Of a stretch of 40,442 nt of DNA, positions 1-36,714 are shown one piece after another. The stretch covers positions 1 to 40,442 of the forward strand of contig NIVC01000523.1 in assembly GCA_002269645.1 (NCBI GenBank). Direction: 5' to 3'. Below the pieces are notes generated by a model. That model had not been told where the DNA came from. It made no database searches and was given only the letters and a program-made list of their open reading frames with translations. The DNA comes from Macrostomum lignano. Lineage: Eukaryota. Every line of letters starts with the position of its first letter. Positions within the stretch are counted from its first letter, which is position 1. The position numbers were made by a program, and so were the translations under genes.

Positions 1-29
1 TGCAAAAGGAATAGCTAAGATGTTAAGGC

Positions 30-2417
30 TCACAAGGATTGCTAAGGTTATTGCAAAAGAGAAGCTGTAGTTTAAACAGGTAGTATAAAATTGCGTCTTC
101 AAGGGTTTCTCTTTGTGGAACAGCAATTCTTCTGCTGCTCCAGTCCGTTGAGTCAAAAACGATTTTTTCCAACGTAGTAGCTTTCCTTGTTCATCGCGAA
201 CTTTATAAGAATGGTCATTCACTCTCATGTGCACTTCTGCTGGCTGCCATCGTCGTGTTGATTCTTGCATCCAAACCTTTTCTCCACAACCAAATTTCTC
301 CTCTCCTTAGATCCACGGTTGTAATATTCTTCGGCCTTGTTCTGCTGGTCCTTTAGCTTCTGCAGTACTTTCCTGGACATGACCTGTCTAGGAATTAGAT
401 CTGCTTTTTGGGATCGGCAAATCATAGCGCGCAGTTTGTGTCCAAAGACTAGCTCAGCGCGGTGATGGCATTCCATGCTCGATAGGAGTGTTCTTGTAAT
501 GCAGCAGTGCACATGTGCTTGCCTTCATTGCTCTTCAGAACTGCCTTTAAAATATTCTTGATCGTCTGAACGCCTCTTCCGCTAATCCGTTGGACTGGCT
601 GTACTTCGGCGATGATGTAGCATGCTTGAAGCCGTACTCTTTCGCGAAACAACCAAATTCTCTTCCCGAGAATGGAGGTCCATTGTCAGATCTTAAAATC
701 TTGCAAACTCCATAGGTCTGGAAATACTTCTTTAGTTGCGGGAATCACGGAGGCAGCTGAAGTATTGTTGATCCTAGTGTATTCGATCATCCGACTGTAT
801 TTATCAACATATATCAGGAAATTCTTCCCGTCAATATGGAAAATATCTATGCCACATTCCTGAAATGGGTAGTCCGGTAGGCACTGAGCCACCATCGGTT
901 CCTTCTGTGGCTTTCTTTGGCTTTCCTGGCAGGCAATGCACACGCTGAAGTCATTTCTTGAATATCACATCTAATTCCAGGCCAGTAGACGCTCTCTGAC
1001 GCCTTTAAGCTTGCCTTCACAATTCCAGGGTGTCCAGTATGCAGCTTCTGTAGCACTTCCATTCTCATTGAGTTTGGAACGACTATTCGGTTCTTCATCC
1101 AGATCAGATTGCCATGCGCAGTCAGATCATGTCTGACGTTCCAGAAGCAACGAAGCTCAGTCACAAGCTGGCTTCTGTGGTGAGGCCAACCAACACCGAT
1201 GATCTCAGCGAGTTGTTGCAGTGTTGAGTCCTTTGCCGTTTCATTTTCCAGTTTCTGCATCAGTTCTGGGAATCCAACCGACATTCTAACACCGAGCACA
1301 TGACCTTCAATGTCATCTTCGAGTTGTTTAGAGGCATGTACGTTCTTTAAGAAAGCGCGGCTTAGAGTGTCTGGAATGTGCAAGTCCTTACCGGGAACAT
1401 ATATAATGTGCAGGTTGTACTTCTGAACTAGTAGCATCAGTCTCTGCAATCTTGCTGTAAGAGTTGAAATTGGCTTCCGGAAGATGTTCTCTAGTGGCTT
1501 GTGGTCGCTCTCGACCGTTACCTTGTGTCCCCAGACGTACTGGTGGAATCGCTTGCAGCCAAACACAATAGCCAAAAGTTCCTTTTCGATCTGAGCATAC
1601 TTCCGTTGGATGGCGTCAGTGATGACAAAGCGTATTCCAGCGGGTGTCCATCTTGCAGGATAGTTGCTCCGAGACTGTGTTGACTAGCATCGACTGACAG
1701 AGTAAGTGGTGCATTCGGGTTATAGCGAGCTAAGACTGGTGCGTCGCAAAGACTCTGCAAAATTGATTCGTACGCTTTTTTGTGTTCATTTGTCCAGTTC
1801 CACTGAGCATTCTTCGTCAGCAATGTGCATAGCGGTGCTGCCTTAGATGACAGATCCAAAATGAATTTGGACAAAAAATTTGCACATCCTAGAAATCGCA
1901 TAAGTTGCTGCTTTCTCAAATTGCCGGATAGAGTATCTGGTCGGGGCATATCGCGCATTGCTTTTACTTTGTCTGGGTCGACTTTAATTCCAGTGTGCGA
2001 AAGTATGTTGCCGAGGAATTTCAACTCCTTCAATCCGACTTTCCGATTTTTATAATTCAGGCGCAAATTCTTTGCATGGCACATTTCCATAAGCTGCCTC
2101 ACAGCTTCATTGTGTTCTTCAACAGTCTTGCCCCAAACAATGAAGTCGTCAATAAAATTGTTGCAGTTTCTGATCTTGTCTGAGATCTCCTCCCGAACTC
2201 GCTTCTGGTAGACTTCCGATGCGGAACAAATTCCATAGAGCATTCTCAGCCAACGATATCGTCCAAAAGGTGTGTGAAAGCACGTCATCAACAAACTTTC
2301 ATAATCCAATGCAATCTGGTGAAAACTCGCAGTCGCATCAAAAGTTGAGAACAGAGCAGCGTTTCCAATTTCTGCAATAATTTCGTCATAAGACGGTATC
2401 TGATACTGCTCTCTCAT
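30..2417 (-). pseudogene. pol region (RT, RNase H, integrase) broken by several frameshifts
   Basis: RT 2417-1600 (FDATASFHQI, FHTPFGRYRWLRMLYGI, NFIDD, LKFLG); RNase H ~1700-1350; integrase HHCC ~1040-930 and DDE core ~880-560. Frame changes near 1600, 945, 715, 575, 500 and 260. Confidence 0.9.
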
Positions 2418-3982
2418 TATGTTGGCATTCAGATGCTGAGAGTCTAGGCAAAGACGTATAGTCTTGTCTGCTTTCTAGACGACGACCACATTTGAAACAT
2501 ACTTCGTGGGCTCATCACACTTGGTGATGAGTCCATCCGAAACCAGGTGATCTAATTCAGCCTTCAAAGGTTGCATTGCTGCAAACGGGATTCTTCGAGG
2601 GCGATCCATCCAAGATTCTTTGTCATCGCGCAGGCTGATGTGATAACTCCCAGGTAAGCAACCTGTTCCTTCAAAGACATCGGGATACTCTCGAAGAAAT
2701 CTTTCATCTGTCCACGTGGACTTAAACCCTTTAGGTTGAACAGAAACTCCGAAGTTGAATTTCACCAGGCCTATCTCTTCTGCAGTTTTCCATCCGATGA
2801 GTGGAATGAGCCTCTCTTTAATCACAATAAATTCATTTTCATGCTTGACTCCTTCATATTCCAGTTTCAATTGTACCTTCCCTGCGACTGTTCGGCGCGA
2901 CCTTTTATAGCAAAAGAGTCTGCAAGACGTTGCTTGTATCGACGTGTTTGGTGCAATCCGCCTAAGCAGATGTTCAGGGAGTACATTTGCGTCCGCTCCT
3001 GTGTCGCATTTGCAATTCACCAGCTGACCTTCGATTTTGATACCAACAGTTGTTCTACTGTCTCTGTCGTTGCCACCCGGTCGCAGAGATGCTGACATGA
3101 CCCACGAATCTTGACGATCAGATTCTGAGCTTTCATTTGTATTTCGATCCAAGGCTCTTACGGTCTTATTCCGACAAACGTTGCTGAAGTGGTTTTGCTT
3201 TCCGCAAGATTTGCACGTCTTGCCATATGCAGGGCATGAACCTTTCTTGTGTTTCTTACCACAGAATGAGCAACCCTCCGACTTTCCTACCATCGGCTTT
3301 CCATTGGACCCAAACCTTTTGTTCGGTCGTCTCTCCTTGTACTTGAGATCTGGTCTGCCTGTTGAGCGAGGCTTCACAACAGAATTGACTTCTTTCTGGA
3401 TGTATTTCGAAATCTCTCCGGAGGTGTTTCCCGTCATGATCCGCACTTGGGTCTTTGATGATTCACTTGCACGGCAGATAGATATAGCCTTATCTAGCAT
3501 CAACTCCTGCTCACGTAGAAGCCGTTCTCGCAACTCTGTGTCTCTGATTCCGAGGACAATCTGATCTCTGATTATTGATTCGTTCACCGTCAATTCGTAG
3601 GCTGGCTTCTCGAATGAGCATGTCTTGATAAGTTGTTTCAGGCCGCTGACGAATGAGTCAATGCTCTCATGCTCATTCTGCCTGCGTTGCCAAAATTTGT
3701 AGCGCTCGAAAGTTTCGTTCGCACTCGGCTTGCAATATTCTTCGAACAGTTTTGTCACTTTCGACAGCTCTTCGTCTCCTTCCGATTTCTTGAAAGTTGA
3801 ATAAATCTCACGACCTTCTTCTCCGATGGCTGTTAGCAGTGTCGCTATTTGTACTTTAGCCGGTGATTCGTCACGCTTGGTTGCAGTCATATAGAGCTCA
3901 ACGCAGAAATCCATTTACTCCAGTTTTCCGCCTTGTGCTCATCAAAGCAGAATGGCTTTGGGGGTTTGAGCCCGCCATCCAT
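2418..3982 (-). pseudogene. gag-protease region of the Gypsy element
   Basis: ATG at 3982 gives MDGGLKPPKPFCFD...NWSKW, then a frameshift near 3915 into ORF 3914-2475 (QIATLLTAIG, FERYKFWQRRQ, zinc knuckles, CKCDTGADAN). An in-frame TAG at 2477-2475 interrupts VVV*KADKTIRLCLD. Confidence 0.85.
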
Positions 3983-4049
3983 TTGAATCCAGATCCAGTT
4001 GAGCACAGTACTGCATTTGACAATTCAAATCCAGAGCTCTTCACAAGTG

Positions 4050-4063
4050 CACCTCTGACACCA
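4050..4063 (-). promoter_or_regulatory. Primer-binding site, tRNA-Leu-like
   Basis: Minus strand reads TGGTGTCAGAGGTG immediately after the LTR end. TGGTGTCAGA is complementary to the 3' end (...UCUGACACCA) of tRNA-Leu. Confidence 0.7.
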
Positions 4064-4224
4064 TGTTGTGTTGCGACACAGAAGTCTTATGTTTCTAGAT
4101 GCTTGTATGGATATAGAGCAGCTGTGTAGTTATAAGTGCTCTTTAACACTCGTTTATTAGTTGTGTCCATAGACATAAATCAAACACACAGAGAATGAGT
4201 CTATGAGTCTATCATAACATAACA
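4064..4224 (-). repeat. 5' LTR (161 bp) of the Gypsy element
   Basis: Starts TGTTGTGTT at 4064 and ends AACATAACA at 4224 (8/9 inverted match, TG...CA). AATAAA on the minus strand. Directly abuts the PBS. Confidence 0.8.
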
Positions 4225-4280
4225 TTCTGTATCCATATCTATAGCCATATCTTAAAAAATTCTTATAGTAAGTCTATCTA

Positions 4281-4870
4281 TGAGGGCTGTCCCTAAAGTC
4301 AGTGCACTTTCTTCACTACAGCCTTTTCTCACCAATCAGAAATATTAAGTCTGTTGCAGTTGAAAAAAGAATTATCTACCCATTAAAATGACTTTCTGTT
4401 TATTTCTGTATCTGCTGGCATTCTTGAGATATGAGCACTTTTCTGCCCCACCCCTTGTGCTACTTTTACAAATTTCCATAGACTAAAGCTTTCCTGATGC
4501 ACAAAACAAAACATTCAACAAATCAATAAAACATGCGCAACATAAAAGCTGAGGAAAGAACAGTTAAAAGTTAATCAACATTGTCCTAAGGCTTCTCCAC
4601 ATAGTCACCACTAGGTGTGCTGCACACTTCTGTCATCGGCTGTGCATGTCAACAATGCACCTCCCACATGACCAAGAAAACAGAGGAGACAATCGAGCAG
4701 GCAAATTTTGTGCTGCTCTCACTGCCACCCTATTCTCTAGATTTGTCAACAGCTGACTTTGCCTTCTTTCCAAAGAGAAAGAAGCTGCTGCATGGACAAA
4801 TCTTTGCTTGTCGTGGGAGCCTAGAAGCATTGACTTGCCAAGTTCTCCTTCATGAGATGCTGCGCTCAGA
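4281..4870 (+). mobile_element. Mariner-type DNA transposon fossil (internally deleted)
   Basis: TA followed by TGAGGGCTGTCCCTAAAGT at 4279-4299 resembles a mariner terminus. At 4645-4800, translation gives HVNNAPP (cf. HDNAPxH) and, in the next frame, LPPYSLDLSTADFAFFPKRKKLLHG (cf. mariner PPYSPDLAPSDFxLFxxLKxxLxG). Confidence 0.7.
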
Positions 4871-5289
4871 TTTTGCTGATTGACGACATTGACGACATGC
4901 TTTCTCTTTTTTCATTCCCTTTTTCCCTTTCTCACTACTTTCTCTTTCTCTCCTGTTTCCCTTCTCTCCTTTCTATCTCTTTTTATATTGTTTAAGTAAC
5001 TAAAGTAAAAAAAGTAGCCAATTCTTGCCAAGATTTTTTTGCAACAGAGATGGCCTACTTATTGGTTGGTTTCCAAGAAGCCTCTTGCAATCTAGCCTTA
5101 TTTGATAGTAGCAGATGCTAGGCAGCTTCCCTATTGGCTTAATTCATCTTAACTTAAGCCCCTACTATTCTAACTACAATGTGTATATAGTGTCAAAAAT
5201 GTTTTTGATTCCCTGAGCTTTAACCTCCCCTCCCCCTATTTTAACCTCAATATACTTGTAATATCGAAAAAATTTTGTCTTTGTTGCCT

Positions 5290-5790
5290 GAGTCCCCAAT
5301 TCTAAAGACTTAAAAGCTCCTCTCACATTGAAAGTGAAAACATTTATCTTAAATTTAGCCCCCAATATCCTAACCCCATCTGTCCTTGGCCCTAGGGACT
5401 TAAGAGCTTCCCTTGAAAGTGACATCATTTATCTTAATTTGAGTCCCACCACCCAACCCAAACATGCACATGGTAGCAAAACTCTGTGATTTAAGTGCCC
5501 AACCCTAGTAACTTAAAAGCTCTTTTTACATTGAAAGTAAAGACATTCATCTTAACATTAGTCCCATACCACCCAACCAGAGCATGCATATGGCATTGAA
5601 CCTATTGCTAAGTCCCTAAATCCATGCAAGGGCTTTAGAGCCCCCCTTGGAAAATGAAAACATTCATCTTAACTTTAGCCTCTGCCACCTAACCACAATG
5701 TGGACATGGCATTGACAATCTATTTTGATGCTTAAGTCCTAAATTCCAGGGACTTATAAGTTCTTCTCACTTTGAAACTGGCAACATTCT
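5290..5790. repeat. Old, diverged tandem repeat, ~87-123 bp spacing, about 5 units
   Basis: Motif (A/C)C(A/T)TTG(G)AAA(G/A)TGAAAACATT(T/C)ATCTTAA recurs at ~5325, 5411, 5528, 5645 and 5769. Confidence 0.65.
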
Positions 5791-6483
5791 TTTTTACTAC
5801 CCTGATCCTATCAAATCAATAGCTTCGATATGCTAATATGCTTTGCCAAAGAACCTCGATATCTGTAACATCCTATAGCTGTATCCATAGCTACAATAGA
5901 ACTCTAGTACCTATGGTTTATGGACATGATATAAAACAAAAAATTCTTGACTAATAGCTATGTTTGTTGAAAATCTAGAACTATCATATCAAAATAATTT
6001 TAGTGTAAGTAGAATATTTCATTCTAGATTTAAATAACCTTGAAAGTTTCATATCTCAAGTCTTAGCCTTAGGGGAGAGGGGCAACTAACCTTCTTTTCT
6101 TCCTTTGGTTAGTCCACTGGGAAGAATCTATTCAAATTCCTCCAGTAGACTTTGCATTACCCTAGAGTTAATATAATCTAGAAAGTTAGAATGGCAATAA
6201 TATTTTTTCTTAGAAACAAAAACAAGCATAGACAATGTAATTGATGCCTTCATTTTAGCTCATAAAATAGTATCTACAAAGTCACACAGTGGTAGAGTAC
6301 TGTTTGCTGTGGCCTATTTTGCATTGATAAAGACCAATATATAATGCAATATCATGTAAAACTTAGCTATCTTCTAAATTTGATGTTTACACTGTAAATA
6401 ACAAACTTTTGCTGTTGATTCTTAGCTTATTATAAGCATAGAAATTGTGGTTTGTTAAAAAGACAGGATAAACTAATACTGAA

Positions 6484-6739
6484 ATGCAAGGCGGTGGTGT
6501 GATAAGCATCACGGTTAAGTGCGACTTGGCCTACAGTCAAGCTGCTGGTCGGGTGCACCTGCGTCTGGGCGTTGATCGAACTCTCGACTCTCTTCTTGAC
6601 GAATTCTGCTCTCATATGAGAATTCGAAGATTGCCAACATTGTCACTGCGCAATGATTTGCATAGCGAACTGGCATTGGACTTGACATTGGCCGCTGCTG
6701 GCCTGTCTGATGGCGACGTTATCTATGCCTTCGACTCTG
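6484..6739 (+). CDS. Exon encoding a ubiquitin/SUMO-like (beta-grasp) domain
   Basis: MQGGGVISITVKCD...VHLRLGVDRTLDSLLDEFCSHMRI...LDLTLAAAGLSDGDVIYAFDS. The pattern (strand, strand, T-L-x-x-L helix, terminal TLxxxGLxDGDxI) is typical of Ubl folds. Strong donor G|GTGAG at 6739/6740 (phase 1). Confidence 0.6.
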
Positions 6740-7377
6740 GTGAGGGTTCAGTTAGTTTGCAGGCAGCTTCGAGCACTTTTGCTTTAGTTAGAGGCCCATT
6801 ATTACTGCCCATTCCGCCGACTCCCCTGAGCATGCACACTAGTGTGCGCGGATACGTACGCAGCCATACGCACTTGGGGGTTGGCCCTCACGGTCGTTAA
6901 TTTTCAGCCCCGCTGGGACAAAATTGCAGCGACGGCACTGTGACTACAAGCGACGACAGGCTAGAGATGACAGCCTTGTCGATCTACTATCGATTTACTA
7001 AAATTAGTATTTGTTCAAGTCAGTAGTATCGTGCAAATGCTCGCTTCCAGATCCGCTTCACTATCGGCCTCTGATTGGTCGACTTGCCATGGCGACGACA
7101 GGGTGGCTTGTCGTCAACTTGTCGTCATCAGCCTGTCCTCGCTGAAATTTTTTTCCAGCGGGCAAGCAGAGTTAAGCCGAGATTCCAATTAAGCCTCAAA
7201 TTAATGTACAAAATCGTACCTCCGTACCATGGCGTGGAAGTCCATAACAGAACATTTGGAGCCGAGTTATCACTAGCCAGTGGATTTAGTCTTGAAGTCT
7301 TGATTAGCGCCTGAATATCTAAATATCTCTCATACGAGATGCATCTTTGTTTATCTCGTCTCATTGCTAAACTGCAG

Positions 7378-10300
7378 ATCCGCCGCCTCCGCCCCCCGAA
7401 CCGGTGCTGGCCAGGGACTCGGCTTCTAATTGGTGGATCTTAGCTGCGGCCGCACTGGCTATTGGCCTGTTCGGTGCTGCCGCCATCATTACAATGTTTA
7501 TCATTGGCAATCAGCCTATTGATGCGGTGAGATTGAGAACCAGGGCCACTGGTCCCCTGTTTAGGTTTGGGATGTCACTGATTCCAGCTGCTTTTTGTTT
7601 GGGATGTCACTGATTCCAGCTGTTTCGGTTTGGGATGTCACTGATTCCAGCTGTTTCGGTTTGGGATGTCACTGATTCCAGCTGTTTCGGTTTGGGATGT
7701 CACTGATTCCAGATGTTTCGGTTTGGGATGTCACTGATTCCAGATGACTCGGTTTGGGATGTCACTGATTCCAGCTGTTTCGGTTTGGGATGTCACTGAT
7801 TCCAGCTGTTTCGGTTTGGGATGTCACTGATTCCAGCTGTTTCGGTTTGGGATGTCACTGATTCCAGATGACTCGGTTTGGGATGTCACTGATTCCAGCT
7901 GTTTCGGTTTGGGATGTCACTGATTCCAGATGACTCGGTTTGGGATGTCACTGGTTCCAGCTGTTTCAGTTTGGAATGTCGCTGATCTCAGATACTTTAG
8001 TTTGGAATGTCACCGATTCCAGATATTTGTGTTTAGAATGTCACTGATTCCACATTTTTGTGTGTTTAGAATGTCACTGATTTCAGATCTTTGTGTGTTT
8101 AGAATGTCACTGATTCCAGATCTTTGTGTGTTTAGAATGTCACTGATTCCAGATCTTTGTGTGTTTAGAATGTCACTGATTCCAGATCTCTGTGTAGAAT
8201 GTCACTGATTCCAGATCTTCGTGTGTTTAGAATGTCACTGATTCCAGATCTCTGTGTGTTTAGAATGTCACTGAGTACAGATCTCTGTGTGTTTAGAATG
8301 TCACTGAGTACAGATCTCTGTGTGTTTAGAATGTCACTGAGTACAGATCTCTGTGTGTTTAGAATGTCACTGATACTGTAATCATAAACTTGTTACTGGA
8401 TAATTATCTCGTCACCGCTCGCACCCACAGTACGGAGTCATTATCGACGCCGGGTCCAGCTCATCCAAAGTGTACATCTACACCTGGCCAGCGTCCAAGA
8501 CAAATGGAAATGGCGTAGTGTCTCAACGCGCAGTAGCCAATAATTCTTGTACGTGTTTTGCTTATAAAATATTTATAAACTGGAAACCAGTTAAAATTAG
8601 ACACTAAAATTGTCGAATTAATTTTTGCAGCTGCTCCAATAGAAAGCTCTCAAGGCATTAACCAGATTGAATGGTCGCTAAGATCGTTGGATTCCGTGGT
8701 GCCAGAGGATCGGAAAGCCAAAACTGAACTGTTCCTTGGCGCCACTGCCGGCATGCGAATGTACAGGTGAATGGCATTGTCCGCTGCCAACTGCCGTCAT
8801 GGGTTCGAGCCCTAGATACTTGATATCTATGGCCAGCCTTGTAGAATTTAGACATGTGTTCTGTCAGTGTCCCATATCTTCAGTTGCTGGGCCAGCCTCC
8901 CAGATCCCCAGTTGTTAAGCCAGCCTCTCAGACCCTCAATTTCTGGGCCAGTCTTTAAGATCCTCAGTTGCTGGGCCAGCCTCCCAGAGTGTCAGTTGCT
9001 GGGCCAGCCTCCCATAATGCTCGGTTGCTGGACCAACCTCCCAGATCCCCAGTTGTTAAGCCAGCCTCTCAGTGCTTTAGTTTCTGGGCCAGCCTCCAAG
9101 ATCCTTAGTTGCTGGGCCAGCCCCCCCTCCCCAGATCCTCAATTGCTGGGTCAGCCTATCAGATCCTCAGCCACTGGGCCAGCCTCCTAGATCCTCAGTT
9201 ACTAGGCCAGCCTCCCAGATCCTCAGTTATTGGGCCAGCCTCCCAGATCCTCAGTTACTGGGCCAGCCTCTCAGATCCCCAGTTGTTAAGCCAGCCTCCC
9301 AGTGTCAGTTTCTGGGCCAGCCTTCCAGAGTGTCAGTTGCTGGGCCAGCCTCCCAGTGTCAGTTGCTGGGCCAGCCTCCCAGACCCTCGGTTGCTGGGCC
9401 AGCCTCCATCCCAGATCCTCGGTTGTTGGGCCAGCCTCCCAGATCCTCGGTTGCTGGGCCAGCCTCCCAGATTTCCAGTTGCAGGGCCAGCCTCCCAGAT
9501 TCCCAGTTGCTGGGCCAGCCTCCATCCCAGATCCTCGGTTGCTGGGCTAGCCTCCCAGACCCTCGGTTGCTGGGCCAGCCTCCCAGATTCCCAGTTGCTG
9601 GGCCAGCCTCCATCCCAGATCCTCGGTTGCTGGGCCAGCCTCCATCCCAGATCCTCGGTTGCTGGGCCAGCCTCCCAGATCCTCGGTTGTTGGGCCAGCC
9701 TCCCAGACCCTCGGTTGCTGGGCCAGCCTCCCAGATTCCCAGTTGCTGGGCCAGCCTCCCAGATTCCCAGTTGCTGGGCCAGCCTCCATCCCAGATCCTC
9801 GGTTGCTGGGCCAGCCTCCATCCCAGATCCTCGGTTGCTGGGCCAGCCTCCCAGATCCTCAGTTCCTGGGCCAGCCTCAATACCAGATCCTCAGTTGCTG
9901 CGCATGGCGCCATCATTCTAAGAATTCCACTTGACACACAAAAAACCCGCAGCGCCGTCAACAGCACAGCAGCAGAGTTAGTATTGAACGGAGCTCGGCA
10001 GGTACTAACCAGCAAGTTCGCTTACAAAGTATCCAACGCTACAGGACAAATTCGTATAATCACCGGAGCAGAAGAAGCAGTTGGCGCCTGGATTAGCGTT
10101 TATTATCTCAAGGTATTCAATATCGCTATTCATTGCCGATATGTATCGAAAAATCACTTTTCTACTGACTCAATTGTAGAACAGTTTCGGAGATTTTGCC
10201 TCTTCCTCGCTGACCTCGCGAGTGGCCAGATCCGTTGGCTACCGTCAGCTAGCTAACGATTTTGACACCTTTGGCAGCTTGGACCTCGGCGGCGCCAGCA

Positions 10301-12655
10301 CTCAGATTGCATTCGTTCCGGCTGGCAATTTCACTCCAGCTGATTCGGTATCATCAAAGACTCACATTGTACCGTTGAGTTTGTACGGCAAAGTGTACAA
10401 TGTGTACGCTTACAGCTTCCTGTGCTACGGTAAAGCTGAAGCTGAAAACAGGATGCTGGCTAGCGTTATTGCTAATGCTGGCTATAATAGTTCGGCTGTC
10501 ATAAATACGCCTTGTTGGCAGGTAAGCATTTTTATGGGTCTGCTTCTAAAGCATTGGATGCTTTATAGCCCTGAAGTATCGGATGTTTTATAGCCCTGAA
10601 GTATCAGATGCTTTATAGCCCTGAAGTATCGGATGTTTCATAGCCCTGAAGTATCAGATGTTTTATAGCCCTGAAGTATCGGATGTTTTTAGCCCTGGAG
10701 TATCGGGGGGTTTTGTAGCCCTGGAGTATCGGATGTTTTTTAGCCCTGGAGTATCGGGGGGTTTTGTAGCCCTGAAGTATCGGAGGTTTCAGTAGCCTGA
10801 AGTATCGGCGGTTTCAGTAGCCTGAAGTATTGGAAGTTTCAGTAGCCTGAAGTATCGGAGGTTTCAGTAGCCTGAAGTGTCGTATCGGCGGTTTCAGTAG
10901 CCTGAAGTATCGGCGGTTTCAGTAGCCTGAAGTATCGGAGGTTTCAGTAGCCTGAAGTATCGGAGGTTTCAGTAGCCAGAAGTATCGGAGGTTTCAGTAG
11001 CCTGAAGTATCTCAGGTTCAGTAGCCTGAAGTATCGGCGGTTTCAGTAGCCTGAAGTATCGCAGGTTTCAGTAGCCTGAAGTATTGGAAGTTTCAGTAGC
11101 CTGAAGTATCGGAGGTTTCAGTAGCCTAAAGTATTGGAAGTTTCAGAACCCAGAAGTGTTTTATAGAAGTTTTTATAGCCCTTAATTATAGATGGTTTCA
11201 GCGCTCTGAAGTATCAGATCAGAGTGATGATCGTGCACCACTCCCCCATACCACGCAGGCTGACTACACAGCAACTGTCCGAGCAACTGACGTATTTCAA
11301 CGTCCCTGCTCTGATCGATGGCAGCTGCAGCCTCCGCCGCCTCCGCCATCAGTTCTTGCTAGACTCAATTTCACAATTCGGGGCACTGGCAGCTATGAGA
11401 ACTGCTCAAAATTAGTTGGTAAATTTTTCAACGCCACCTGCGATCAGAGCACATGCTCGTTTAATGACGTTTTCCAACCGGCGCCCGCTGGCAAGTTTGT
11501 GGCATTCTCCGGCTTCTACTATGTGGCGTCATTTTTCAACGCTAGTAATATTGGATCCGACCGAATGCAGTTTGTTAATGCTGTGAGAGCCTTCTGCCAG
11601 AAGAGATATGTGGCATCCATTGGCTATAGCGATAGCTTCCTGAGATGGTACTGCTTTGATGGAGTGTACGTTCTGTCGTTATTGAATGCCTATGGATTCA
11701 ATGAGACTAACTGGGGTCTGCTTGAGTTTGAGGACTCGGTATGTTTGGGGGGGTTTTATACATATTTTTTTCTGGGATAATGGGATTTTAATAATAGGGT
11801 TACCTTGAGTCGAATAGGAGAATTTATGAGGATTTTAATAATGAGCCCACCTTGGGTCTAATGGGAATTTGAGGATTTAAATTATGAGTCCACCTTGAGT
11901 CGAATGGGGGAATGGGGAATTTAATAGTGAGTCCACCTTGAGTCGATTGGGAGAATTTATGAGGATTTTAATAATGAGTCCACCTTGAGTCGATTGGGAG
12001 AATGAGGATTTTAATAATGAGTCCACCTTAAGTCGATTGGGAGAATGAGGATTTTAGTAATGAGTCCACCTTAAGTCGATTGGTAGAATAAGGATTTTAA
12101 TAATGAGTCCACCTTGAGTCAATTGGGAGAACGGGTAATTTAATAATGAGTCCACCTTGAGTCAATTGGGAGAACGGGTAACTTAATAATGAGTCCACCT
12201 TAAGCTTCTGTAGTTGAGGTACCAGCACTTAAAATAACTATTCTAGCTAACTTTTTTACACAAAAATTTAATGCATGCTGCTATTTGTAATAATTAATTT
12301 TAGATTACTGTCAATCATTCTACAAGTGCAGGCGAACAGGTAAGGCTGGCACAAAAATTATAATTTGTGGACTTTATTGTTTCTTTATAATGTTTAATTT
12401 TAACAAAATTAATTTGGTGTTTAAAATTTCTCAAATCTTTTGTCAGGCCACGTCAGCTAACAAAGTGGGCTGGTCGCTTGGCTACACGATACTTCAGTCC
12501 GGTCTGATACCCGCCGAATCGCCTCTGATGTCGCTCTCGCTCCCATGTTTATCATTCTGTTGATAATGTTCGCCGCATTCTTGGGATTTGCCGTGCTGTT
12601 CGGTTGTTTGGGTAGGCGAGTTAAACAGCGAGCTCAAGGCTATGTGACTATCTGA
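7378..12655 (+). CDS. GDA1/CD39-family ectonucleoside triphosphate diphosphohydrolase (NTPDase/apyrase), 7 exons; 5' exon unresolved
   Basis: Exons 7378-7526 (TM1), 8431-8548 (ACR1 YGVIIDAGSSSSKVY), 8631-8766 (ACR2 GATAGMR), 9953-10112 (ACR3 ITGAEEAVGAW), 10249-10521 (ACR4 DLGGASTQ; YSFLCYG), 11259-11738 (FVAFSGFYY, YCFDGVYV) and 12447-12655 (ACR5 VGWSLG, TM2). All junctions are GT-AG and phase-compatible. One missing base near 12543 shifts the TM2 frame. Confidence 0.92.
7555..8380. repeat. Minisatellite in NTPDase intron, 31-bp units grading into 33-bp units
   Basis: GTTTCGGTTTGGGATGTCACTGATTCCAGCT (31 bp) to ~7990, then GTGTGTTTAGAATGTCACTGATTCCAGATCTCT (33 bp). Confidence 0.95.
8850..9900. 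repeat. Minisatellite in NTPDase intron, 28/32-bp units
   Basis: GTTGCTGGGCCAGCCTCC(ATCC)CAGATCCTCG repeated. Confidence 0.95.
10555..11220. repeat. Minisatellite in NTPDase intron, ~25-bp units
   Basis: TAGCCCTGAAGTATCGGATGTTTTA grading to TAGCCTGAAGTATCGGAGGTTTCAG. Confidence 0.95.
11780..12205. repeat. Minisatellite in NTPDase intron, ~43-47-bp units
   Basis: AATGAGGATTTTAATAATGAGTCCACCTT(A/G)AGTCGATTGGGAG repeated; period 43 at 12001/12044. Confidence 0.9.
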
Positions 12656-12726: not shown

Positions 12727-13640
12727 AACCTGAATAGCCCTGAAATATCCCACCTGAATAGCCCTGAAATATCCCACCTGAATAGCCCTGAAATATCCAA
12801 TCTGAATAGCCCTGAAGTATCCCATCTGAATAGCCCTGAAGTATCCCACCTAAATAGCCCTGAAGTATCCCATCTGAATAGCCCTGAAGTATCCCACCTG
12901 AATAGCCCTGACTTATCCCACCTGAATAGCCCTGACTTATCCCACCTGAATAGCCCTGACTTATCCCACCTGAATAGCCTGAAGTATCCCATCTGAATAG
13001 CCCTGAAGTATCCCATCTGAATAGCCCTAAAGTATCCCATCTGCATAGCCCTGAAGTATCCCACCTGAATAGCCCTGACTTATCCCACCTAAATAGCCCT
13101 GAAGTATCCCATCTGAATAGCCCTGAAGTATCCCACCTGAATAGCCCTGACTTATCCCACCTGAATAGCCCTGAAGTATCCCATCTGAATAGCCCTGACT
13201 TATCCCACCTGAATAGCCCTGACTTATCCCACCTGAATAGCCCTGACTTATCCCACCTGAATAGCCCCGACTTATCCCACCTGAATAGCCCTGACTTATC
13301 CCACCTGAATAGCCCTGACTTATCCCACCTGAATAGCCCTGAAATATCCCTAGCCCTGAAGTATCCCATCTGAATAGCCCTGAAATATCCCTAGCCCTGA
13401 AGTATCCCACCTGAATAGCCCTGAAATATCCCTAGCCCTGAAGTATCCCACCTGAATAGCCCTGAAGTATCCCATCTGAATAGCCCTGACTTATCCCACC
13501 TGAATAGCCCTGACTTATCCCACCTGAATAGCCCTGAAATATCCCTAGCCCTGAAGTATCCCATCTGAATAGCCCTGAATTATCCTATCTGAATTGCCCT
13601 GAAGTGTCCCACCAAAATAGCCCTGAAGTATCCCACCTGT
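12727..13640. repeat. Minisatellite, 24-bp units, downstream of the NTPDase stop
   Basis: CCTGAATAGCCCTGA(AG/AA/CT)TATCCCA repeated. Confidence 0.95.
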
Positions 13641-13894
13641 ATTAAGTTTTTATAATCACTTTGCTTTGCGGTATTTAATTTTTTTGTAATTTAGTTTCAT
13701 ACTTGAATTTGTTCTTTTTCAAAATAAGTATACTGCGCTGGTTACACTAATTGCATGCGATACCAACCAAACTTTCAGATTATGAGTTCCGCAATTAAGA
13801 ATATTATATTGGCGCCAAACTTTTTAACGGTAACCACTTCTTTTCTTCAATAATCTGTAGGATTTAAACCATCAACATCCAATAATGTCTAAAA

Positions 13895-14140
13895 TTGCCC
13901 TACAATCATGTCTTGAACCGCCATACAATCATGTCTTGAATCACCCTACAATCATGTCTGGAATCGCCCTACAATCATGTCTGGAATCGCCCTACAATCA
14001 TGTCTGGAATCGCCCTACAATCATGTCTGGAATCGCCCTACAATCATGTCTGGAATCGCCCTACAATCATGTCTGGAATCGCCCTACAATCATGTCTGGA
14101 ATCGCCCTACAATCATGTCTTGAATCGCCCTGTAATTCTG
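13895..14140. repeat. Minisatellite, 23-bp units
   Basis: TCATGTCTGGAATCGCCCTACAA repeated about 10 times. Confidence 0.95.
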
Positions 14141-14699: not shown

Positions 14700-15505
14700 C
14701 TTCAAGCCCGTTTCTATTAAAAACCGGCCTTCAAATCCGTAGCCAATGAAAATCGGCCTTCATATCAAGACCCCCTTAAAATTCAGTCTTCCAATCGAGA
14801 CCCCTTGAGAATCGGCCTTCAAATCCAGGCACCCTAAGAATCGGCCTTCAAATCCAGACCCCCTCAAAAATCGGCCGTCAAATCCAGCCCCCCCCCCTAA
14901 GAATCGGCCTTCAAATCCAGCCCCGCTAAGAATCGGCCTTCAAATCCAGACCCCTCAAAAATCGGCCTTCAAATCCAGCCCCTCCCCTAAGAATCGGCCT
15001 TCAAATCCAGACCCCCAAGAATCGGCCTTCAAATCCACCCCCCCCCCTAAGAATCGGCCTTCAAACCCAGCCCCCTAACAATCGGCCTTCAAATCCAGAC
15101 CATTAAGAATCGGCCTTCAAATCCAGACCATTAAGAATCGGCCTTCAAATCCAGCCCCCCCTAACAATCGGCCTTCAAATCCAGACCCCCTAAGAATCGG
15201 CCTTCAAATCCACCCCCCCTTAAGAATCGGCCTTCAAATCCAGACCCCCTCAAAAATCGGCCTTCAAATCCACCCCCCCCTAAGAATCGGCCTTCAAATC
15301 CAGACCCCCCCCAAGAATCGGCTTTCAAATCCAGACCCCCCCCCCAAGAATCGGCCTTCAAATCCAGCCCCCCTAACAATCGGCCTTCAAATCCAGCCCC
15401 CCTAACAATCGGCCTTCAAATCCAGACCCCCGTAAGAATCGGCCTTCAAATCCACCCCCCTTAAGAATCGGTATTCAAATCCAGACCCCTCGAAAATCGG
15501 CCTAC
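14700..15505. repeat. Minisatellite, ~28-32-bp units with variable C-run
   Basis: TAAGAATCGGCCTTCAAATCCAG(A)C(n) repeated; the C-run length varies between units. Confidence 0.95.
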
Positions 15506-15580
15506 AAAAGCAGATCTATTATAAAGACAAAGCGATTTTTTTAAATAAAAAAAACTGTAACCAACTTTTAACACTTTCAG

Positions 15581-18500
15581 GAAACGAAATCAAAGCATCA
15601 TCAGCATTATCGCGACAGAGATCGCGTGGACAGAGACAGAGACAGGGATAAAACTAGAGACAGAGATCGTGACAGTCAAAGTGGCAGGCGTCGCGAAGAT
15701 CGAAAGCATCATCGCCATGGCGATGAGGTAGAGAAGCACAGAAAATCGAGACACAGACGGAAGTCCTCCAGCAGCAGCAGCAGCAGTTCGTCCTCGTCAG
15801 ATGATTCTCCAGCCAGACAGAAATCTGAAAAGCAGTCCAGCGGCGCCTCTATTGAAGAGCGTCGTCGGGTGAAAGCGCTGCTCAAAGCTGCCGAGACGCC
15901 CGAGCAGAAGCGGGCCCGTCGGTTAGCTAAGAAGGCGGCTAAGTCGGAACGATGGCGTCGGGAACTGGGCTGGGAGGGCGACTACACGGATATAGATAAT
16001 CCGTTTGGCGACGAGAAGCTCACGCAGACTTTCGTTTGGCATAAGAAACTGCAACGCGAGGGCGGCACTATGGCCGACGTGGAGAGAAAAGCGGCTGAGA
16101 ATCGGGCTGAGCTCGAAAAGGTTTTGTTTTGGGTTCATTGTTTAAGTCATTGTTTGGTTATCTGAGTCATAATTCTACTTCAAAATTCTAGTCATTGACG
16201 TCATAGATCAGTGATTGAAGTCATTGATCAGTCATTGAAGTCATTGATCAGTCCTTGAAGTCATAGATCAGTCATTGATCAGTCCTTGAAGTCATAGATC
16301 AGTCATTGATCAGTCCTTGAAGTCATAGATCGGTCATTGATCAGTCATTGAAGTCATAGATCGGTCATTGATCAGTCATTGAAGTCATAGATCGGTCATT
16401 GATCAGTCCTTTAAGTCATAGATCGGTCATTGATCAGTCATTGAAGTCATAGATCGGTCATTGATCAGTCATTGAAGTCATAGATCGGTCATTGATCAGT
16501 CATTGAAGTCATAGATCGGTCATTGATCAGTCCTTTAAGTCATAGATCGGTCATTGATCAGTCATTGAAGTCATAGATCGGTCATTGATCAGTCATTGAA
16601 GTCATAGATCGGTCATTGATCAGTCCTTTAAGTCATAGATCGGTCATTGATCAGTCATTGAAGTCATAGATCGGTCATTGATCAGTCATTGAAGTCATAG
16701 ATCGGTCATTGATCAGTCCTTTAAGTCATAGATCGGTCATTGATCAGTCATTGAAGTCATAGATCGGTCATTGATCAGTCATTGAAGTCATAGATCGGTC
16801 ATTGATCAGTCCTTTAAGTCATAGATCGGTCATTGATCAGTCATTGAAGTCATAGATCGGTCATTGATCAGTCATTGAAGTCATAGATCGGTCATTGATC
16901 AGTCATTGAAGTCATAGATCAGTCATTGATCAGTCATTGATCAGTCATTGAAGTCATAGATCGGTCATTGATCAGTCATTGAAGTCATAGATCGGTCATT
17001 GATCAGTCATTGAAGTCATAGATCGGTCATTGATCAGTCATTGAAGTCATAGATCAGTCATTGATCAGTCATTGATCAGTCATTGAAGTCATAGATCGGT
17101 CATTGATCAGTCATTGAAGTCATAGATCGGTCATTGATCAGTCATTGAAGTCATAGATCGGTCATTGATCAGTCATTGAAGTCATAGATCAGTCATAGAT
17201 CAGTCATTGAAGTCATAGATCGGTCACTGGTGTGTCATCACATGCTCATTAGGATCATTGCTATAGCTTTATCCTATTCCCCAAACAAACCGCAGGTCCG
17301 CGAGCGTTGCCGTCAGAACGAGCTGGAACGCGAGGCCCGGCTGAAGGAGCAGGAGCAGGAGCAGCGCGATCGCGAGTCTGAGAACTTTCGCCAGTGGTGG
17401 CAGCAGGAGGACGCGTTCCACTTGAAGCAGGCGCGGGCCAGATCGGCCATCCGCATAGCCGAAGGCCGCGCCAAGCCCATCGACCTGCTGGGCAGGTATG
17501 CCGAGGCTTTGCAAAGAATCTCTGGTATTAAAATTAAACGCGATGACGGGGCGGACGACAATGATGACGAATTTGATGAAGACGAGAGTCTGGCTTTCTT
17601 AGACGCCCATTCGCCGGACGCCCTGCTCACCGGCTTGAGCGTTGACGATCTCGAGGATTTAAAAGTCGATATCGGCGTCTATCAGAAATTGGAACGGCAG
17701 AGCGGCTTAACCGAAGGCGCCTGTCGGGACAGCGAGACTTTCTGGAGCTGCGTAGCTCTGCTAGTTCAGCACGCTCTGGATAGCAAGAGTGCACCGGCCG
17801 CCAGCTCCGCCACGGCTGCCGTTGCTGACAGAATCGACGCCGTCATCAGGGGCAAGTCGGCCAGCCAGTTGGCCGCTCTGGAAGACTCGGTGTCCGCCAG
17901 AATCTGCGCGGCCGGACCGGGCACCGATCTGGCCTACTGGGAGGAGATGGTGGACAAAGTTAAAGTGGCCAAGGCGAAGGCTACGCTGCAGGAGTTGCAT
18001 AAAGTGCTGCTGCGTAGGCGAATGCAGAGACTGCAGGTTAGTAGGTTTGATAGAATCTTCATCTTCATTTAATACCTTAACTAGCGCTAATCCCCAATCG
18101 GAACTACCCCGCTAATCCATACCCGGAAACCCGATGAAAACTCTAGCGCTCCAACGATTCTAGCGCTTATTTTTATGGTAGATCGTTTTCAACTGGAAAT
18201 ACCCCCTGATCCTCATCAGGAAATACCCCACTGATCCTCATCTGGAAATACCCCACTGATCCTCATCTGGAAATACCCCACTGATCCTCATCAGGAAATA
18301 CCCCGCTGATCCTCATCAGGAAATACTCCACTGATCCCTGTCCGGAAATACCCCCCTGATCCTCATCAGGAAATACCCCACTGATCCTCATCAGGAAATA
18401 CCCCGCTGATCCTCATCAGGAAATACTCCACTGATCCCTGTCCGGAAATACCCCCCTGATCCTCATCAGGAAATACCCCACTGATCCTCATCAGGAAATA

Positions 18501-36095: not shown

Positions 36096-36714
36096 AGAGG
36101 CTGTTTGGTGAGTCCGTTGCCCTTTTGCAATTATAAAACGCATACAAAGTGATCTTTTTTCAAAGGTTTCGAACTACAAGTGTTGAGTATCTCTTCCCGC
36201 CTTCTGAAGCTGCCATCAGCAGGAATGAGATCATACTATGATCACGCAAGTTCGGTGCGATAAAAATTCAAGTCATTTATCAACGTATCCTGACAGGGGG
36301 TTGTATCGCTTATAAAAATTATTAGGGCATCATCGAATTATTTGCTGGCCTCCTTCGCGCTCACGGAATTTCTATAGTTGGTGAGGCGACCCTCTTTGCA
36401 TGTACATCAGGAATGAAAACTATTTTATGTGCATGGAACAGGGCAAGAAGAACTAAAAATCCCTTCCAAATAATGGCGAACAATAGAAAGCAGAGAGGAG
36501 AACTCGAATGGGGGTATAGTTGGCAGGGCCTCACTACATGACTAAACAACGAGATAAAAAGGCTGGGAAGAGAAGAGGCCGTCTTTCAGTCACCCTCCGA
36601 CCACCTCACACAGATCGATCGATATTCGAGATGGGGTGAGGGGCACGGGGAGTTACTCTGCGAATTTCCTTTTCCCTTGGTTCCCTGCTTTTGCCCGTGA
36701 CAGCGAACTCGAGC

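What the first reader, a model, noticed from the sequence alone, without database searches (positions are those of the whole stretch)
6484..7526. Possible ubiquitin-like domain fused to the N-terminus of an NTPDase
The first NTPDase exon (7378) starts in phase 1 (xAT-PPPPPPEPV...), has an in-frame TAA just upstream (7368-7370) and no ATG before its TM helix, so an upstream phase-1 exon is required. The Ubl exon ends in phase 1 at a strong G|GTGAG donor (6739). An optional phase-1/phase-1 exon 6908-7018 (A|GTCAGT) also fits. This would put a cytosolic Ubl domain on a GDA1/CD39 enzyme, an architecture I do not recognise from known NTPDases. Rival model: short first exon ATG 7229-7265 (MAWKSITEHLEP) with a weak donor, leaving the Ubl as a separate ~125-aa gene ending at TAG 7026.
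Basis: inference. Interest (0 to 1): 0.7.

Follow-up and report, generated by a model that had tools for sequence, protein, structure and literature searches.

The report
Ubiquitin-like domain fused to flatworm NTPDase
The flatworm Macrostomum lignano makes a cell-surface ATP-degrading enzyme (a CD39-type NTPDase) whose cytosolic N-terminus carries a ubiquitin-like domain; the fusion is real, is shared by NTPDases of many invertebrate phyla, and I found no paper that describes it.

Summary
The window is a whole 40,442-bp Macrostomum lignano scaffold.

- **Gene model:** A nine-exon model with canonical splice sites joins exon 6484-6739 directly to 7378-7526. It reproduces the deposited protein PAA81568.1 (597 aa) exactly. 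That annotation comes from an RNA-seq-guided assembly.
- **Fold:** The first exon encodes a beta-grasp domain. The AlphaFold2 model has pLDDT 87, and Foldseek matches SUMO, ubiquitin and Rad60 SLD2 (target-normalised TM up to 0.89).
- **Conservation:** A profile of this domain built only from other species hits one of 1257 six-frame segments of the window (E = 3e-14). The same layout (Ubl, TM1, GDA1/CD39) occurs in molluscs, a brachiopod, an annelid, myriapods, a sea spider, a shrimp, a damselfly, a hemichordate and a starfish. Lingula has both flanking introns at the same position and phase.
- **Rejected models:** A second, intact M. lignano copy lacks 6971-7282. That removes the optional exon's donor and the whole rival exon, so both are rejected.
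- **Absent from:** the vertebrate ENTPD1/3, Schistosoma and crinoid homologues among the 120 best NTPDase hits.
- **Novelty:** The fusion sits in databases, but I found no paper on it. Its function is inferred only: a non-cleavable cytosolic interaction module, most likely for trafficking or turnover.

The parts
6484..6739 (+). Coding exon 1: the complete ubiquitin-like (beta-grasp) domain, residues 1-85 plus the first base of codon 86; the donor is CTG|GTGAGG, phase 1
   Evidence: exon and phase. (fold). (profile without M. lignano, E = 3e-14). (4 of 4 differences from the second copy are third-position and synonymous).
6740..7377 (+). Intron 1 (638 nt). It contains a 312-bp segment (6971-7282) that is absent from the second genomic copy.
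6908..7018 (+). Rejected: its 3' part and donor lie in the segment missing from the second copy, and it is absent from every protein model and homologue.
7229..7265 (+). Rejected: it lies entirely inside the segment missing from the intact second copy.
7378..7526 (+). Coding exon 2: proline linker (D-PPPPPP-EPVLARDSASNWW) plus transmembrane helix 1; enters in phase 1 and ends in phase 0 just before ACR1
   Evidence: The Lingula exon is homologous, with the same boundaries.
8431..8548 (+). Coding exon 3: ACR1 (YGVIIDAGSSSSKVYIY)
8631..8766 (+). Coding exon 4: ACR2 (LGATAGMRMY)
9953..10112 (+). Coding exon 5: ACR3 (ITGAEEAVGAW)
10180..10521 (+). Coding exon 6: ACR4 (DLGGASTQ)
11259..11738 (+). 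Coding exon 7: cysteine-rich membrane-distal lobe of the ectodomain
12304..12339 (+). Coding exon 8 (12 codons; skipped in one database model of another copy, P0124)
12447..12563 (+). Coding exon 9 as it reads in this copy: ACR5 (GWSLGY), then a premature TGA
12541..12655 (+). C-run CCC (12541-12543; CCCC in the second copy), followed by the out-of-frame coding sequence for transmembrane helix 2 and the C-terminal tail (PMFIILLIMFAAFLGFAVLFGCLGRRVKQRAQGYVTI*)

Best explanation
Positions 6484-12655 (+) are a Macrostomum lignano gene for a cell-surface-type (CD39/NTPDase1-2-3-8-like) nucleoside triphosphate diphosphohydrolase.

What is shown:
- Its first coding exon encodes a complete ubiquitin-like beta-grasp domain.
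- That exon is cis-spliced, across a conserved phase-1 intron, to the exon for a proline-rich linker and transmembrane helix 1.
- The layout is an old bilaterian one, present in both protostomes and ambulacrarian deuterostomes. It is not a local accident or a mis-joined pair of genes.

What is inferred:
- The domain sits in the cytosol, because the glycosylated, disulphide-rich catalytic domain lies on the other side of TM1.
- It has no C-terminal Gly-Gly, so it is a built-in (type-2) Ubl. It is not a cleavable or conjugatable modifier.
- Its most likely role is as a docking surface for cytosolic ubiquitin/Ubl-binding proteins that set the enzyme's trafficking or turnover: surface residence, endocytosis or multivesicular-body sorting, or ER quality control. 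That would tune how fast extracellular ATP and ADP are removed.

The confidence of 0.9 applies to identity and architecture. I put about 0.3 on the trafficking/turnover mechanism.
For: Architecture:
- The nine-exon model with canonical AG/GT sites translates exactly to deposited PAA81568.1.
- That annotation derives from STAR/StringTie RNA-seq assembly, cut at trans-splice and poly(A) sites (PMC5730564).
- A second intact genomic copy (P0121, 628 aa) and a 50%-identical paralogue (P0142) have the same N-terminus.
- The 4 nucleotide differences between the copies inside the Ubl exon are all synonymous third positions.

Fold:
- AF2 gives pLDDT 87 with strand-strand-helix-strand-strand...strand order.
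- Foldseek matches SUMO1/2, ubiquitin and Rad60 SLD2: query-normalised TM 0.69-0.80, target-normalised up to 0.89, probability 1.0.
- The family profile hits ubiquitin, Dsk2 UBL, Rad60 SLD and talin F0/F1 in the PDB.
- It also hits proteins carrying 9-13 PF00240 stretches in the 1.8-billion-protein library.
- Pfam YukD and Rad60-SLD each match 23 of 32 members and ubiquitin matches 16 of 32, all sub-threshold.

Conservation:
- About 21 proteins of 441-1697 aa (17 of them 590-640 aa) have the domain at the N-terminus and ACR1 at about residue 125-140 (175 in one merged Strigamia model).
- Named examples come from Crassostrea, Mercenaria, Patella, Plakobranchus, Lingula, Owenia, Strigamia, Chamberlinius, Nymphon, Penaeus, Ischnura, Saccoglossus and Asterias.
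- Logan contigs of about 2 kb carry uninterrupted 613-aa ORFs.
- Lingula has identical intron positions and phases on both sides of exon 2.
- The profile built without M. lignano hits only this exon in the window.

No Gly-Gly: alignment A3.
Against: - I did not see M. lignano reads or junction counts directly. Transcript support is second-hand, through the deposited model.
- An intron-retaining or separately polyadenylated short Ubl transcript (ORF 6484-6900) cannot be excluded as a minor product.
- This particular copy has a 1-nt deletion that removes TM2. It may be a decaying duplicate or carry an assembly error.
- Nothing here tests the function. The most conserved positions are mostly core residues, so no binding surface is identified.
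- The single M. lignano sequence is below Pfam gathering thresholds (YukD 18-20 bits against 27).
Confidence: 0.9

Rival explanations
1. Two separate genes. A small standalone Ubl protein (ORF 6484-6900, or 6484-6739 + 6908-7026) is made, and the NTPDase starts from the short exon 7229-7265 (MAWKSITEHLEP).
For: The 7229 exon has the right phase (37 nt) and an ATG. The ORF from 6484 stays open to 6900.
Against: - The intact second copy lacks 6971-7282 altogether yet encodes the full fusion.
- The donor CGA|GTTATC is weak.
- Every deposited M. lignano model and all orthologues in other phyla start with the Ubl.
- The profile-matching region ends at the 6739 donor, and the intron position is conserved in Lingula.
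Confidence: 0.04
2. The NTPDase mRNA starts by spliced-leader trans-splicing at the 7378 acceptor, using the AUG at the 3' end of the M. lignano spliced leader. The Ubl exon would then belong to an upstream cistron of a polycistronic precursor.
For: About 30% of M. lignano genes are trans-spliced, and the 35-nt leader ends in ATG (PMC8629364; PMC5730564).
Against: - Joining the leader to 7378 puts its ATG out of frame: MIRRLRPPNRCWPGTRLLIGGS*. The NTPDase frame then contains no ATG before the membrane helix.
- The annotation pipeline cuts transcripts at trans-splice peaks, yet it kept both parts in one gene.
Confidence: 0.02
3. The fusion is real, but the Ubl acts as a Ras/Rap-type GTPase-binding or scaffold beta-grasp (RA/RBD/talin-F0-like), or as a regulator of TM-helix packing and oligomerisation that controls catalytic rate. 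It would not be a ubiquitin-mimicking trafficking signal.
For: - The profile hits talin F0/F1 at E ~2e-4.
- Pfam RA_2 matches 2 of 32 members.
- From established knowledge of CD39, not tested here: the cytosolic N-terminus and the TM helices modulate activity, palmitoylation and partner binding.
Against: - The top structural and sequence matches are SUMO, ubiquitin, Rad60 and Dsk2 rather than RA/RBD domains.
- No test made here discriminates between the alternatives.
Confidence: 0.3
4. The Ubl is a cleavable N-terminal ubiquitin-like precursor, as in the ubiquitin-ribosomal protein fusions or FUBI-eS30. It would be removed by a protease to release the mature NTPDase.
For: Natural N-terminal ubiquitin and Ubl fusions that are processed do exist (established knowledge).
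Against: There is no Gly-Gly or any other conserved cleavage motif at the end of the domain in any of 32 family members. The residue at the exon junction varies (D, A, E...), and the following linker is not conserved.
Confidence: 0.03

Closest known systems
Vertebrate cell-surface NTPDases (ENTPD1/CD39, ENTPD2, ENTPD3, ENTPD8) and Schistosoma ATPDase1
   Same: - GDA1/CD39 catalytic domain with ACR1-5; 31-37% identity to homologues in other phyla.
- Two-TM topology, seen in the intact copy P0121.
- A short juxtamembrane segment before TM1.
   Different: - The vertebrate ENTPD1/3 and Schistosoma proteins among the top 120 hits have only a short N-terminal tail and give no match to the Ubl profile, even at E <= 10.
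- The gene here has an 85-residue folded Ubl plus a proline linker in front of TM1.
- In this family the juxtamembrane Cys (C-x-N-x-W-W) is present in 3 of the 4 aligned proteins, and M. lignano has SASNWW instead. From memory, it sits where CD39 has its palmitoylated Cys.
Ubl-NTPDase proteins predicted in other invertebrates (e.g. Crassostrea gigas NTPDase8 isoform X4 XP_011441002, Lingula anatina NTPDase8, Owenia fusiformis, Saccoglossus kowalevskii XP_006815561, Asterias rubens XP_033632927, Ischnura elegans XP_046386805)
   Same: - The same order: Ubl, short linker, TM1, ACR1 at about residue 125-140.
- In Lingula, the same phase-1 intron after the Ubl and the same phase-0 intron before ACR1.
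   Different: - Only 20-29% identity in the Ubl.
- The M. lignano linker is a PPPPPP run and lacks the juxtamembrane Cys.
- None of these proteins has the N-terminal domain annotated by Pfam (only PF01150 is listed).
Integral (type-2) Ubl domains on membrane proteins: HERPUD1/Herp, TMUB1/TMUB2; also lipid-anchored UBL3/MUB (recalled from memory, not tested here)
   Same: A non-conjugatable ubiquitin-fold domain held at the cytosolic face of a membrane. In those proteins it recruits ERAD, proteasome or sorting machinery.
   Different: Those proteins have no enzymatic ectodomain and showed no detectable specific sequence relationship here. The resemblance is in architecture only and is the basis of the functional inference, not a membership claim.
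SUMO1/2, ubiquitin, Rad60 SLD2, Dsk2 UBL (fold relatives)
   Same: Beta-grasp fold: query-normalised TM 0.69-0.80, target-normalised up to 0.89, rmsd 1.5-2.9 A. Profile-level sequence similarity.
   Different: - 10-20% identity.
- No C-terminal Gly-Gly.
- Followed directly by a membrane anchor.
- A family-specific motif T-V-x-x-L-I-x-x-F-C-x-x-K-G-I in helix 1.

Membership tests
GDA1/CD39 nucleoside phosphatase family (PF01150) | Match to the family profile above the curated threshold | tested here: met
   Exon 6 alone scores 69.7 bits against a cut-off of 24.9. The whole deposited protein carries PF01150.
GDA1/CD39 nucleoside phosphatase family (PF01150) | Five apyrase conserved regions (ACR1-5) in order | tested here: met
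   DAGSSSSK, GATAGMR, GAEEAVGAW, DLGGASTQ and GWSLGY are read in exons 3, 4, 5, 6 and 9.
Cell-surface NTPDase subgroup (NTPDase1/2/3/8-like) | Two transmembrane helices, one at each end | tested here: inconclusive
   TM1 is present. TM2 is encoded but out of frame in this copy because of a 1-nt deletion at 12541-12543. It is in frame in the second copy, P0121.
Cell-surface NTPDase subgroup (NTPDase1/2/3/8-like) | Closest relatives are ENTPD1/3/8 rather than the Golgi/ER forms ENTPD4-7 | tested here: met
   The best named hits are ENTPD1, ENTPD3, ENTPD8 and Schistosoma ATPDase1, at 30-36% identity over 86-100% of the query.
GDA1/CD39 nucleoside phosphatase family (PF01150) | Divalent-cation-dependent hydrolysis of NTP/NDP | not testable with these tools
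   Needs an enzyme assay.
Ubiquitin-like beta-grasp superfamily (Pfam clan Ubiquitin) | Beta-grasp fold: a mixed sheet of strands 1, 2, 3/4 and 5 wrapped around one helix | tested here: met
   AF2 pLDDT 87, pTM 0.71, elements E6-14, E21-29, H34-45, E53-56, E78-84. Foldseek gives 445 PDB matches at E <= 1e-3, led by SUMO, ubiquitin and Rad60 SLD2.
Ubiquitin-like beta-grasp superfamily (Pfam clan Ubiquitin) | Significant sequence-profile similarity to ubiquitin-family members | tested here: met
   - The family profile against the PDB: ubiquitin monomer 3e-4, Dsk2 9e-5, Rad60 6e-5.
- It retrieves proteins with 9-13 PF00240 stretches from 1.8 billion proteins.
- The single M. lignano sequence alone is below Pfam gathering scores.
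Conjugatable ubiquitin-like modifiers (type-1 Ubl: ubiquitin, SUMO, NEDD8...) | C-terminal Gly-Gly (or Gly) exposed by processing | tested here: not met
   No Gly-Gly at the domain end in any of 32 members. The domain continues into the linker and TM1. It is therefore filed as an integral Ubl domain, not a modifier.
Conserved Ubl-NTPDase orthogroup of invertebrates | N-terminal domain recognised by a profile built from other species' NTPDase N-termini | tested here: met
   E = 3e-14, and it is the only hit among 1257 six-frame segments.
Conserved Ubl-NTPDase orthogroup of invertebrates | Phase-1 intron directly after the Ubl and phase-0 intron directly before ACR1 | tested here: met
   - Window: CTG|GTGAGG ... 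CAG|AT, and GCG|GTGAGA ... CAG|TAC.
- Lingula: TCAG|GTAAGT ... CCAG|CA, and ...ITE|GTAATT ... TATAG|YAVVLDAGS.
- Many 80-150-aa database fragments stop shortly after reading G-K/G-E from GGTAAG or GGTGAG at this point.

The most novel reading that the evidence does not exclude
The ancestral bilaterian cell-surface NTPDase carried a built-in cytosolic ubiquitin-like tag. The tag couples removal of extracellular ATP/ADP to the cell's ubiquitin-receptor machinery, giving constitutive or regulated endocytosis, multivesicular-body or vesicle sorting, or proteasome-linked quality control. Vertebrates and parasitic flatworms later lost this exon and replaced it with short alternative first exons and lipid or ubiquitin modification of the tail. 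It would be an unstudied regulatory layer of purinergic signalling in most invertebrate phyla.
Probability: 0.25. Interest if true: 0.65.

Novelty: new variant of a known kind. Interest (0 to 1): 0.5.

Why it matters
NTPDases of the CD39 type end purinergic signals. Their short cytosolic tails are known to influence activity, membrane microdomain targeting and partner binding (established knowledge, not tested here).

A folded ubiquitin-like domain on that tail, conserved from flatworms and molluscs to starfish and hemichordates, has three implications:
- It points to a cytosolic control input to ecto-nucleotidase abundance or location that has not been studied.
- It gives a clear gain/loss story, since the domain is absent from the vertebrate and schistosome enzymes examined.
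- It defines a Ubl family that Pfam does not yet annotate on these proteins.

It is directly testable in M. lignano, which has transgenesis.

Tried and rejected
1. A word-indexed homologue search with the 138-aa ORF alone found nothing. A later word-indexed search with the 32-sequence profile returned only 8 unnamed short fragments. The exhaustive representative search was needed.
2. My first hand-made exon model used the wrong acceptors for exons 5 and 7: 9922 instead of 9953, and about 11327 instead of 11259. It was corrected against the deposited protein and the homologues.
3. The first MAFFT alignment of window 6700-7400 against the second copy mis-placed the indel. BLAST gave the true breakpoints, 6970/7283.
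4. The optional exon 6908-7018 and the rival exon 7229-7265 were rejected on the second-copy comparison.
5. Spliced-leader AUG initiation at 7378 was rejected because it is out of frame.
6. A cleavable-precursor reading was rejected because there is no Gly-Gly.
7. Four literature searches for NTPDase/ENTPD with ubiquitin-like or UBL domain terms returned nothing relevant. One search failed on syntax.
8. The 312-bp window-specific intron segment has no other copy in the window or in the second locus. Its origin, insertion or deletion, is unresolved.
Full report
**Where the window comes from.** A search with my hand-assembled NTPDase exons returned, as best hit, 'hypothetical protein BOX15_Mlig026231g1 [Macrostomum lignano]'. 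This is P0001 = PAA81568.1, 597 aa, and its only contig is 40,442 bases long, the length of the window. The window is therefore a whole scaffold of the M. lignano Mlig_3_7 assembly.

**Checking the observation.**
- The ATG at 6484 opens a frame that runs to 6900.
- At 6739/6740 the sequence is CTG|GTGAGG. The exon is 256 nt long and so ends in phase 1.
- The exon at 7378 follows CTGCAG|. It gives (D)PPPPPPEPVLARDSASNWW plus a hydrophobic helix only if entered in phase 1.
- TAA 7368-7370 is in that frame, and no in-frame ATG precedes the helix.
- Downstream exons encode ACR1-ACR5 of a GDA1/CD39 enzyme.

**The gene model.** Nine exons, all with AG|...|GT boundaries, translate exactly to P0001:
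- 6484-6739
- 7378-7526
- 8431-8548
- 8631-8766
- 9953-10112
- 10180-10521
- 11259-11738
- 12304-12339
- 12447-12563

The paper describing that annotation says it was produced by mapping RNA-seq with STAR and assembling with StringTie/TACO. Transcripts were then cut at experimentally mapped trans-splice and poly(A) sites before ORF calling (PMC5730564). This is indirect transcript support. I did not see reads myself.

**Second copy and the rival models.** M. lignano carries many duplicated regions.
- A second locus (L002, NIVC01004043.1) encodes P0121, a 628-aa version with the same N-terminus.
- The window and L002 align at 99.4% over window 1-6873. They align again from 7283 onwards.
- Window 6971-7282 (312 bp) has no counterpart in L002.
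- That segment contains the donor and 3' part of the 'optional exon' 6908-7018 and the whole rival first exon 7229-7265. A copy lacking both still encodes the complete fusion, so neither is a required part of the gene. I reject both.
- Inside the Ubl exon the two copies differ at four positions (6639, 6654, 6669, 6693). All four are third codon positions and silent. This indicates that the frame is under purifying selection.

It fails. Joined to 7378, that AUG reads MIRRLRPPNRCWPGTRLLIGGS*, and the NTPDase frame has no AUG.

**Is the first exon a ubiquitin-like domain?**
- On its own the sequence gives only weak Pfam hits: YukD E = 0.005 and Rad60-SLD E = 0.13.
- Three NTPDase homologues from other animals had N-terminal extensions that align with it over its whole length: an unnamed Logan protein whose relatives cluster with oyster NTPDase8, Lingula, and Owenia.
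- A profile of these four, searched exhaustively against 1.84 billion representatives, found 103 proteins at E <= 1e-3.
- About 21 of them are NTPDases of 441-1697 aa (17 of them 590-640 aa). They have the domain at the N-terminus and ACR1 at residue ~125-140 (175 in one merged Strigamia model).
- Many others are 80-150-aa fragments that read on from the domain into GGTAAG or GGTGAG. These are first exons read into the intron.
- The remainder are proteins with 9-13 bona fide PF00240 ubiquitin stretches.
- Of 32 aligned family members, 23 hit YukD, 23 hit Rad60-SLD and 16 hit ubiquitin in Pfam. All are below the gathering thresholds, with a best E of about 2e-6.
- The family profile hits ubiquitin monomers (3e-4), Dsk2 UBL (9e-5), Rad60 SLD (6e-5) and talin F0/F1 among PDB sequences.
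- AlphaFold2 with this alignment gives mean pLDDT 87, pTM 0.71 and the order E6-14, E21-29, H34-45, E53-56, E78-84.
- Foldseek against the PDB returns SUMO1/2, ubiquitin and Rad60 SLD2. Query-normalised TM is 0.69-0.80, target-normalised TM reaches 0.89, and probability is 1.0.

The beta-grasp fold is established as far as prediction can establish it. There is no Gly-Gly at the end of the domain in any member. It is therefore an integral Ubl domain, not a cleavable or conjugatable modifier.

**Independence test.** A profile built from the family with both M. lignano sequences removed was run against all 1257 six-frame segments (>= 20 aa) of the window. It hit one: + strand 6472-6897, residues 11-85, E = 3e-14.

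**Distribution.** Names attached to the full-length hits are:

| Group | Taxa |
|---|---|
| Molluscs | Crassostrea gigas NTPDase8 isoforms, Mercenaria, Argopecten, Patella, Plakobranchus |
| Brachiopod | Lingula |
| Annelid | Owenia |
| Myriapods | Strigamia, Chamberlinius |
| Sea spider | Nymphon |
| Shrimp | Penaeus |
| Damselfly | Ischnura |
| Hemichordate | Saccoglossus |
| Starfish | Asterias |
| Flatworm | Further M. lignano paralogues, two of which UniProt already calls 'Ubiquitin-like domain-containing protein' |

- Logan contigs of 2.0-2.5 kb carry uninterrupted 613-aa ORFs of the cluster that includes oyster NTPDase8. The same cluster also has exon-1-only fragments, so these contigs look like spliced mRNAs.
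- In Lingula the Ubl exon ends ...LTS G|GTAAGT in phase 1. The next exon ends in phase 0 right before YAVVLDAGS. These are the same two intron positions as in the window.
- None of the vertebrate ENTPD1/3, Schistosoma or crinoid proteins among the 120 best NTPDase hits matches the Ubl profile, even at E <= 10.
- The fusion therefore looks ancestral to at least protostomes plus ambulacrarians, with later losses. Missed first exons in some gene predictions cannot be excluded.
- Between the M. lignano paralogues the Ubl is 50% identical against 42% for the ectodomain. Across phyla the figures are 20-29% against 31-37%. The Ubl is thus constrained to about the same degree as the enzyme.

**How it probably works (inference).** The catalytic domain, with its N-glycosylation sequons and conserved cysteines, must face outward or into the lumen. 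The domain before TM1 is therefore cytosolic. A non-removable ubiquitin fold at the cytosolic face of a membrane enzyme is most simply a docking module.

By analogy with Herp and TMUB1/2, and with the known ability of in-frame ubiquitin to act as an internalisation and MVB-sorting signal, I favour control of trafficking or turnover (about 0.3). That analogy rests on established knowledge and was not tested here. Alternatives are GTPase or scaffold binding, and modulation of TM-helix packing and activity.

The conserved positions (V-T-V, G, T-V-x-x-L-I-x-x-F-C-x-x-K-G-I, Y-V-L, T-L, I-x-x-G-D, L-x-L) look mostly like core positions. They do not point to a particular binding surface.

**Novelty.** The sequence and the fused gene model are public. 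Automatic annotation has recognised a ubiquitin-like domain in two paralogues, but not in this protein, which UniProt lists as 'Uncharacterized protein'. Pfam lists only PF01150 for these proteins. Four full-text searches found no paper that mentions a ubiquitin-like domain on an NTPDase. The library lacks most subscription journals, so this is absence of evidence only. I rate it a new, undescribed variant of a known enzyme family. It is interesting to purinergic-signalling and Ubl specialists but not revolutionary: interest 0.5.

Noticed in passing
window 12541-12655: This copy has CCC where the second copy has CCCC. The frame shifts, the deposited protein ends ...SLSLPCLSFC*, and it loses transmembrane helix 2, which is still readable in the next frame. 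This is either a homopolymer assembly error or a truncated duplicate.
   Followed up: partly
window 6971-7282 (and L002 10391-10440): A 312-bp segment of intron 1 is present only in the window copy, with 2-bp microhomology at the junction. About 50 bp is present only in the other copy, after window 6873. There is no second copy of the 312 bp in either locus, so insertion versus deletion is unresolved.
   Followed up: partly
window 7558-8374, 8870-9900, 10570-11157, 11773-12201, 12728-13639, 13880-14131, 14725-15508: Introns 2, 4, 6 and 7 of the NTPDase gene (and not introns 1, 3, 5 or 8), together with the downstream spacer, are filled with long tandem arrays. Periods are 31, 28, 25, 43, 24/48/72, 23 and 29/59 nt, with 10-36 copies. 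These arrays create long spurious ORFs on both strands.
   Followed up: partly
window 7380-7415 and about 11331-11366: The same short peptide motif occurs twice in the protein: PPPPPP-EP-VLAR at the start of exon 2 and PPPPPP-S-VLAR inside exon 7, each directly after a CTGCAG. The paralogue P0142 has the proline run only in the linker. It may be coincidence or a small internal duplication.
   Followed up: no
window 7420-7440 (residues SASNWW) compared with homologues: Three of the four aligned Ubl-NTPDases have a Cys just before TM1 (C-x-N-x-W-W). From memory, this is where CD39 has its palmitoylated Cys. M. lignano has Ser/Ala there.
   Followed up: no
window 847-3914, minus strand: A remnant of an LTR-type retrotransposon. 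Three adjacent ORFs carry a gag-like zinc knuckle, reverse transcriptase, RNase H and the integrase zinc-binding domain (Pfam RVT_1, RT_RNaseH, RT_RNaseH_2, Integrase_H2C2). They are split by frame breaks.
   Followed up: partly
window 15626-20519, plus strand: The next gene downstream is a cactin homologue: an RS/RD-rich N-terminus, Cactin_mid (E = 3e-44) and the start of CactinC_cactus (E = 7e-16), in separate exons.
   Followed up: partly
window about 34600-36150: About 1.5 kb in which the plus strand is essentially all purine (GC skew and AT skew both 1.0 for 35001-36000). It reads as (GAGAGG...)-type repeats that give long ERREKERGE/LSPSLS pseudo-ORFs.
   Followed up: no
P0150 (Strigamia maritima T1IIW9, 1697 aa): This database protein contains three GDA1/CD39 stretches after one Ubl. 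It is probably three tandem NTPDase genes merged by gene prediction, which hints at tandem duplication of the family in the centipede.
   Followed up: no
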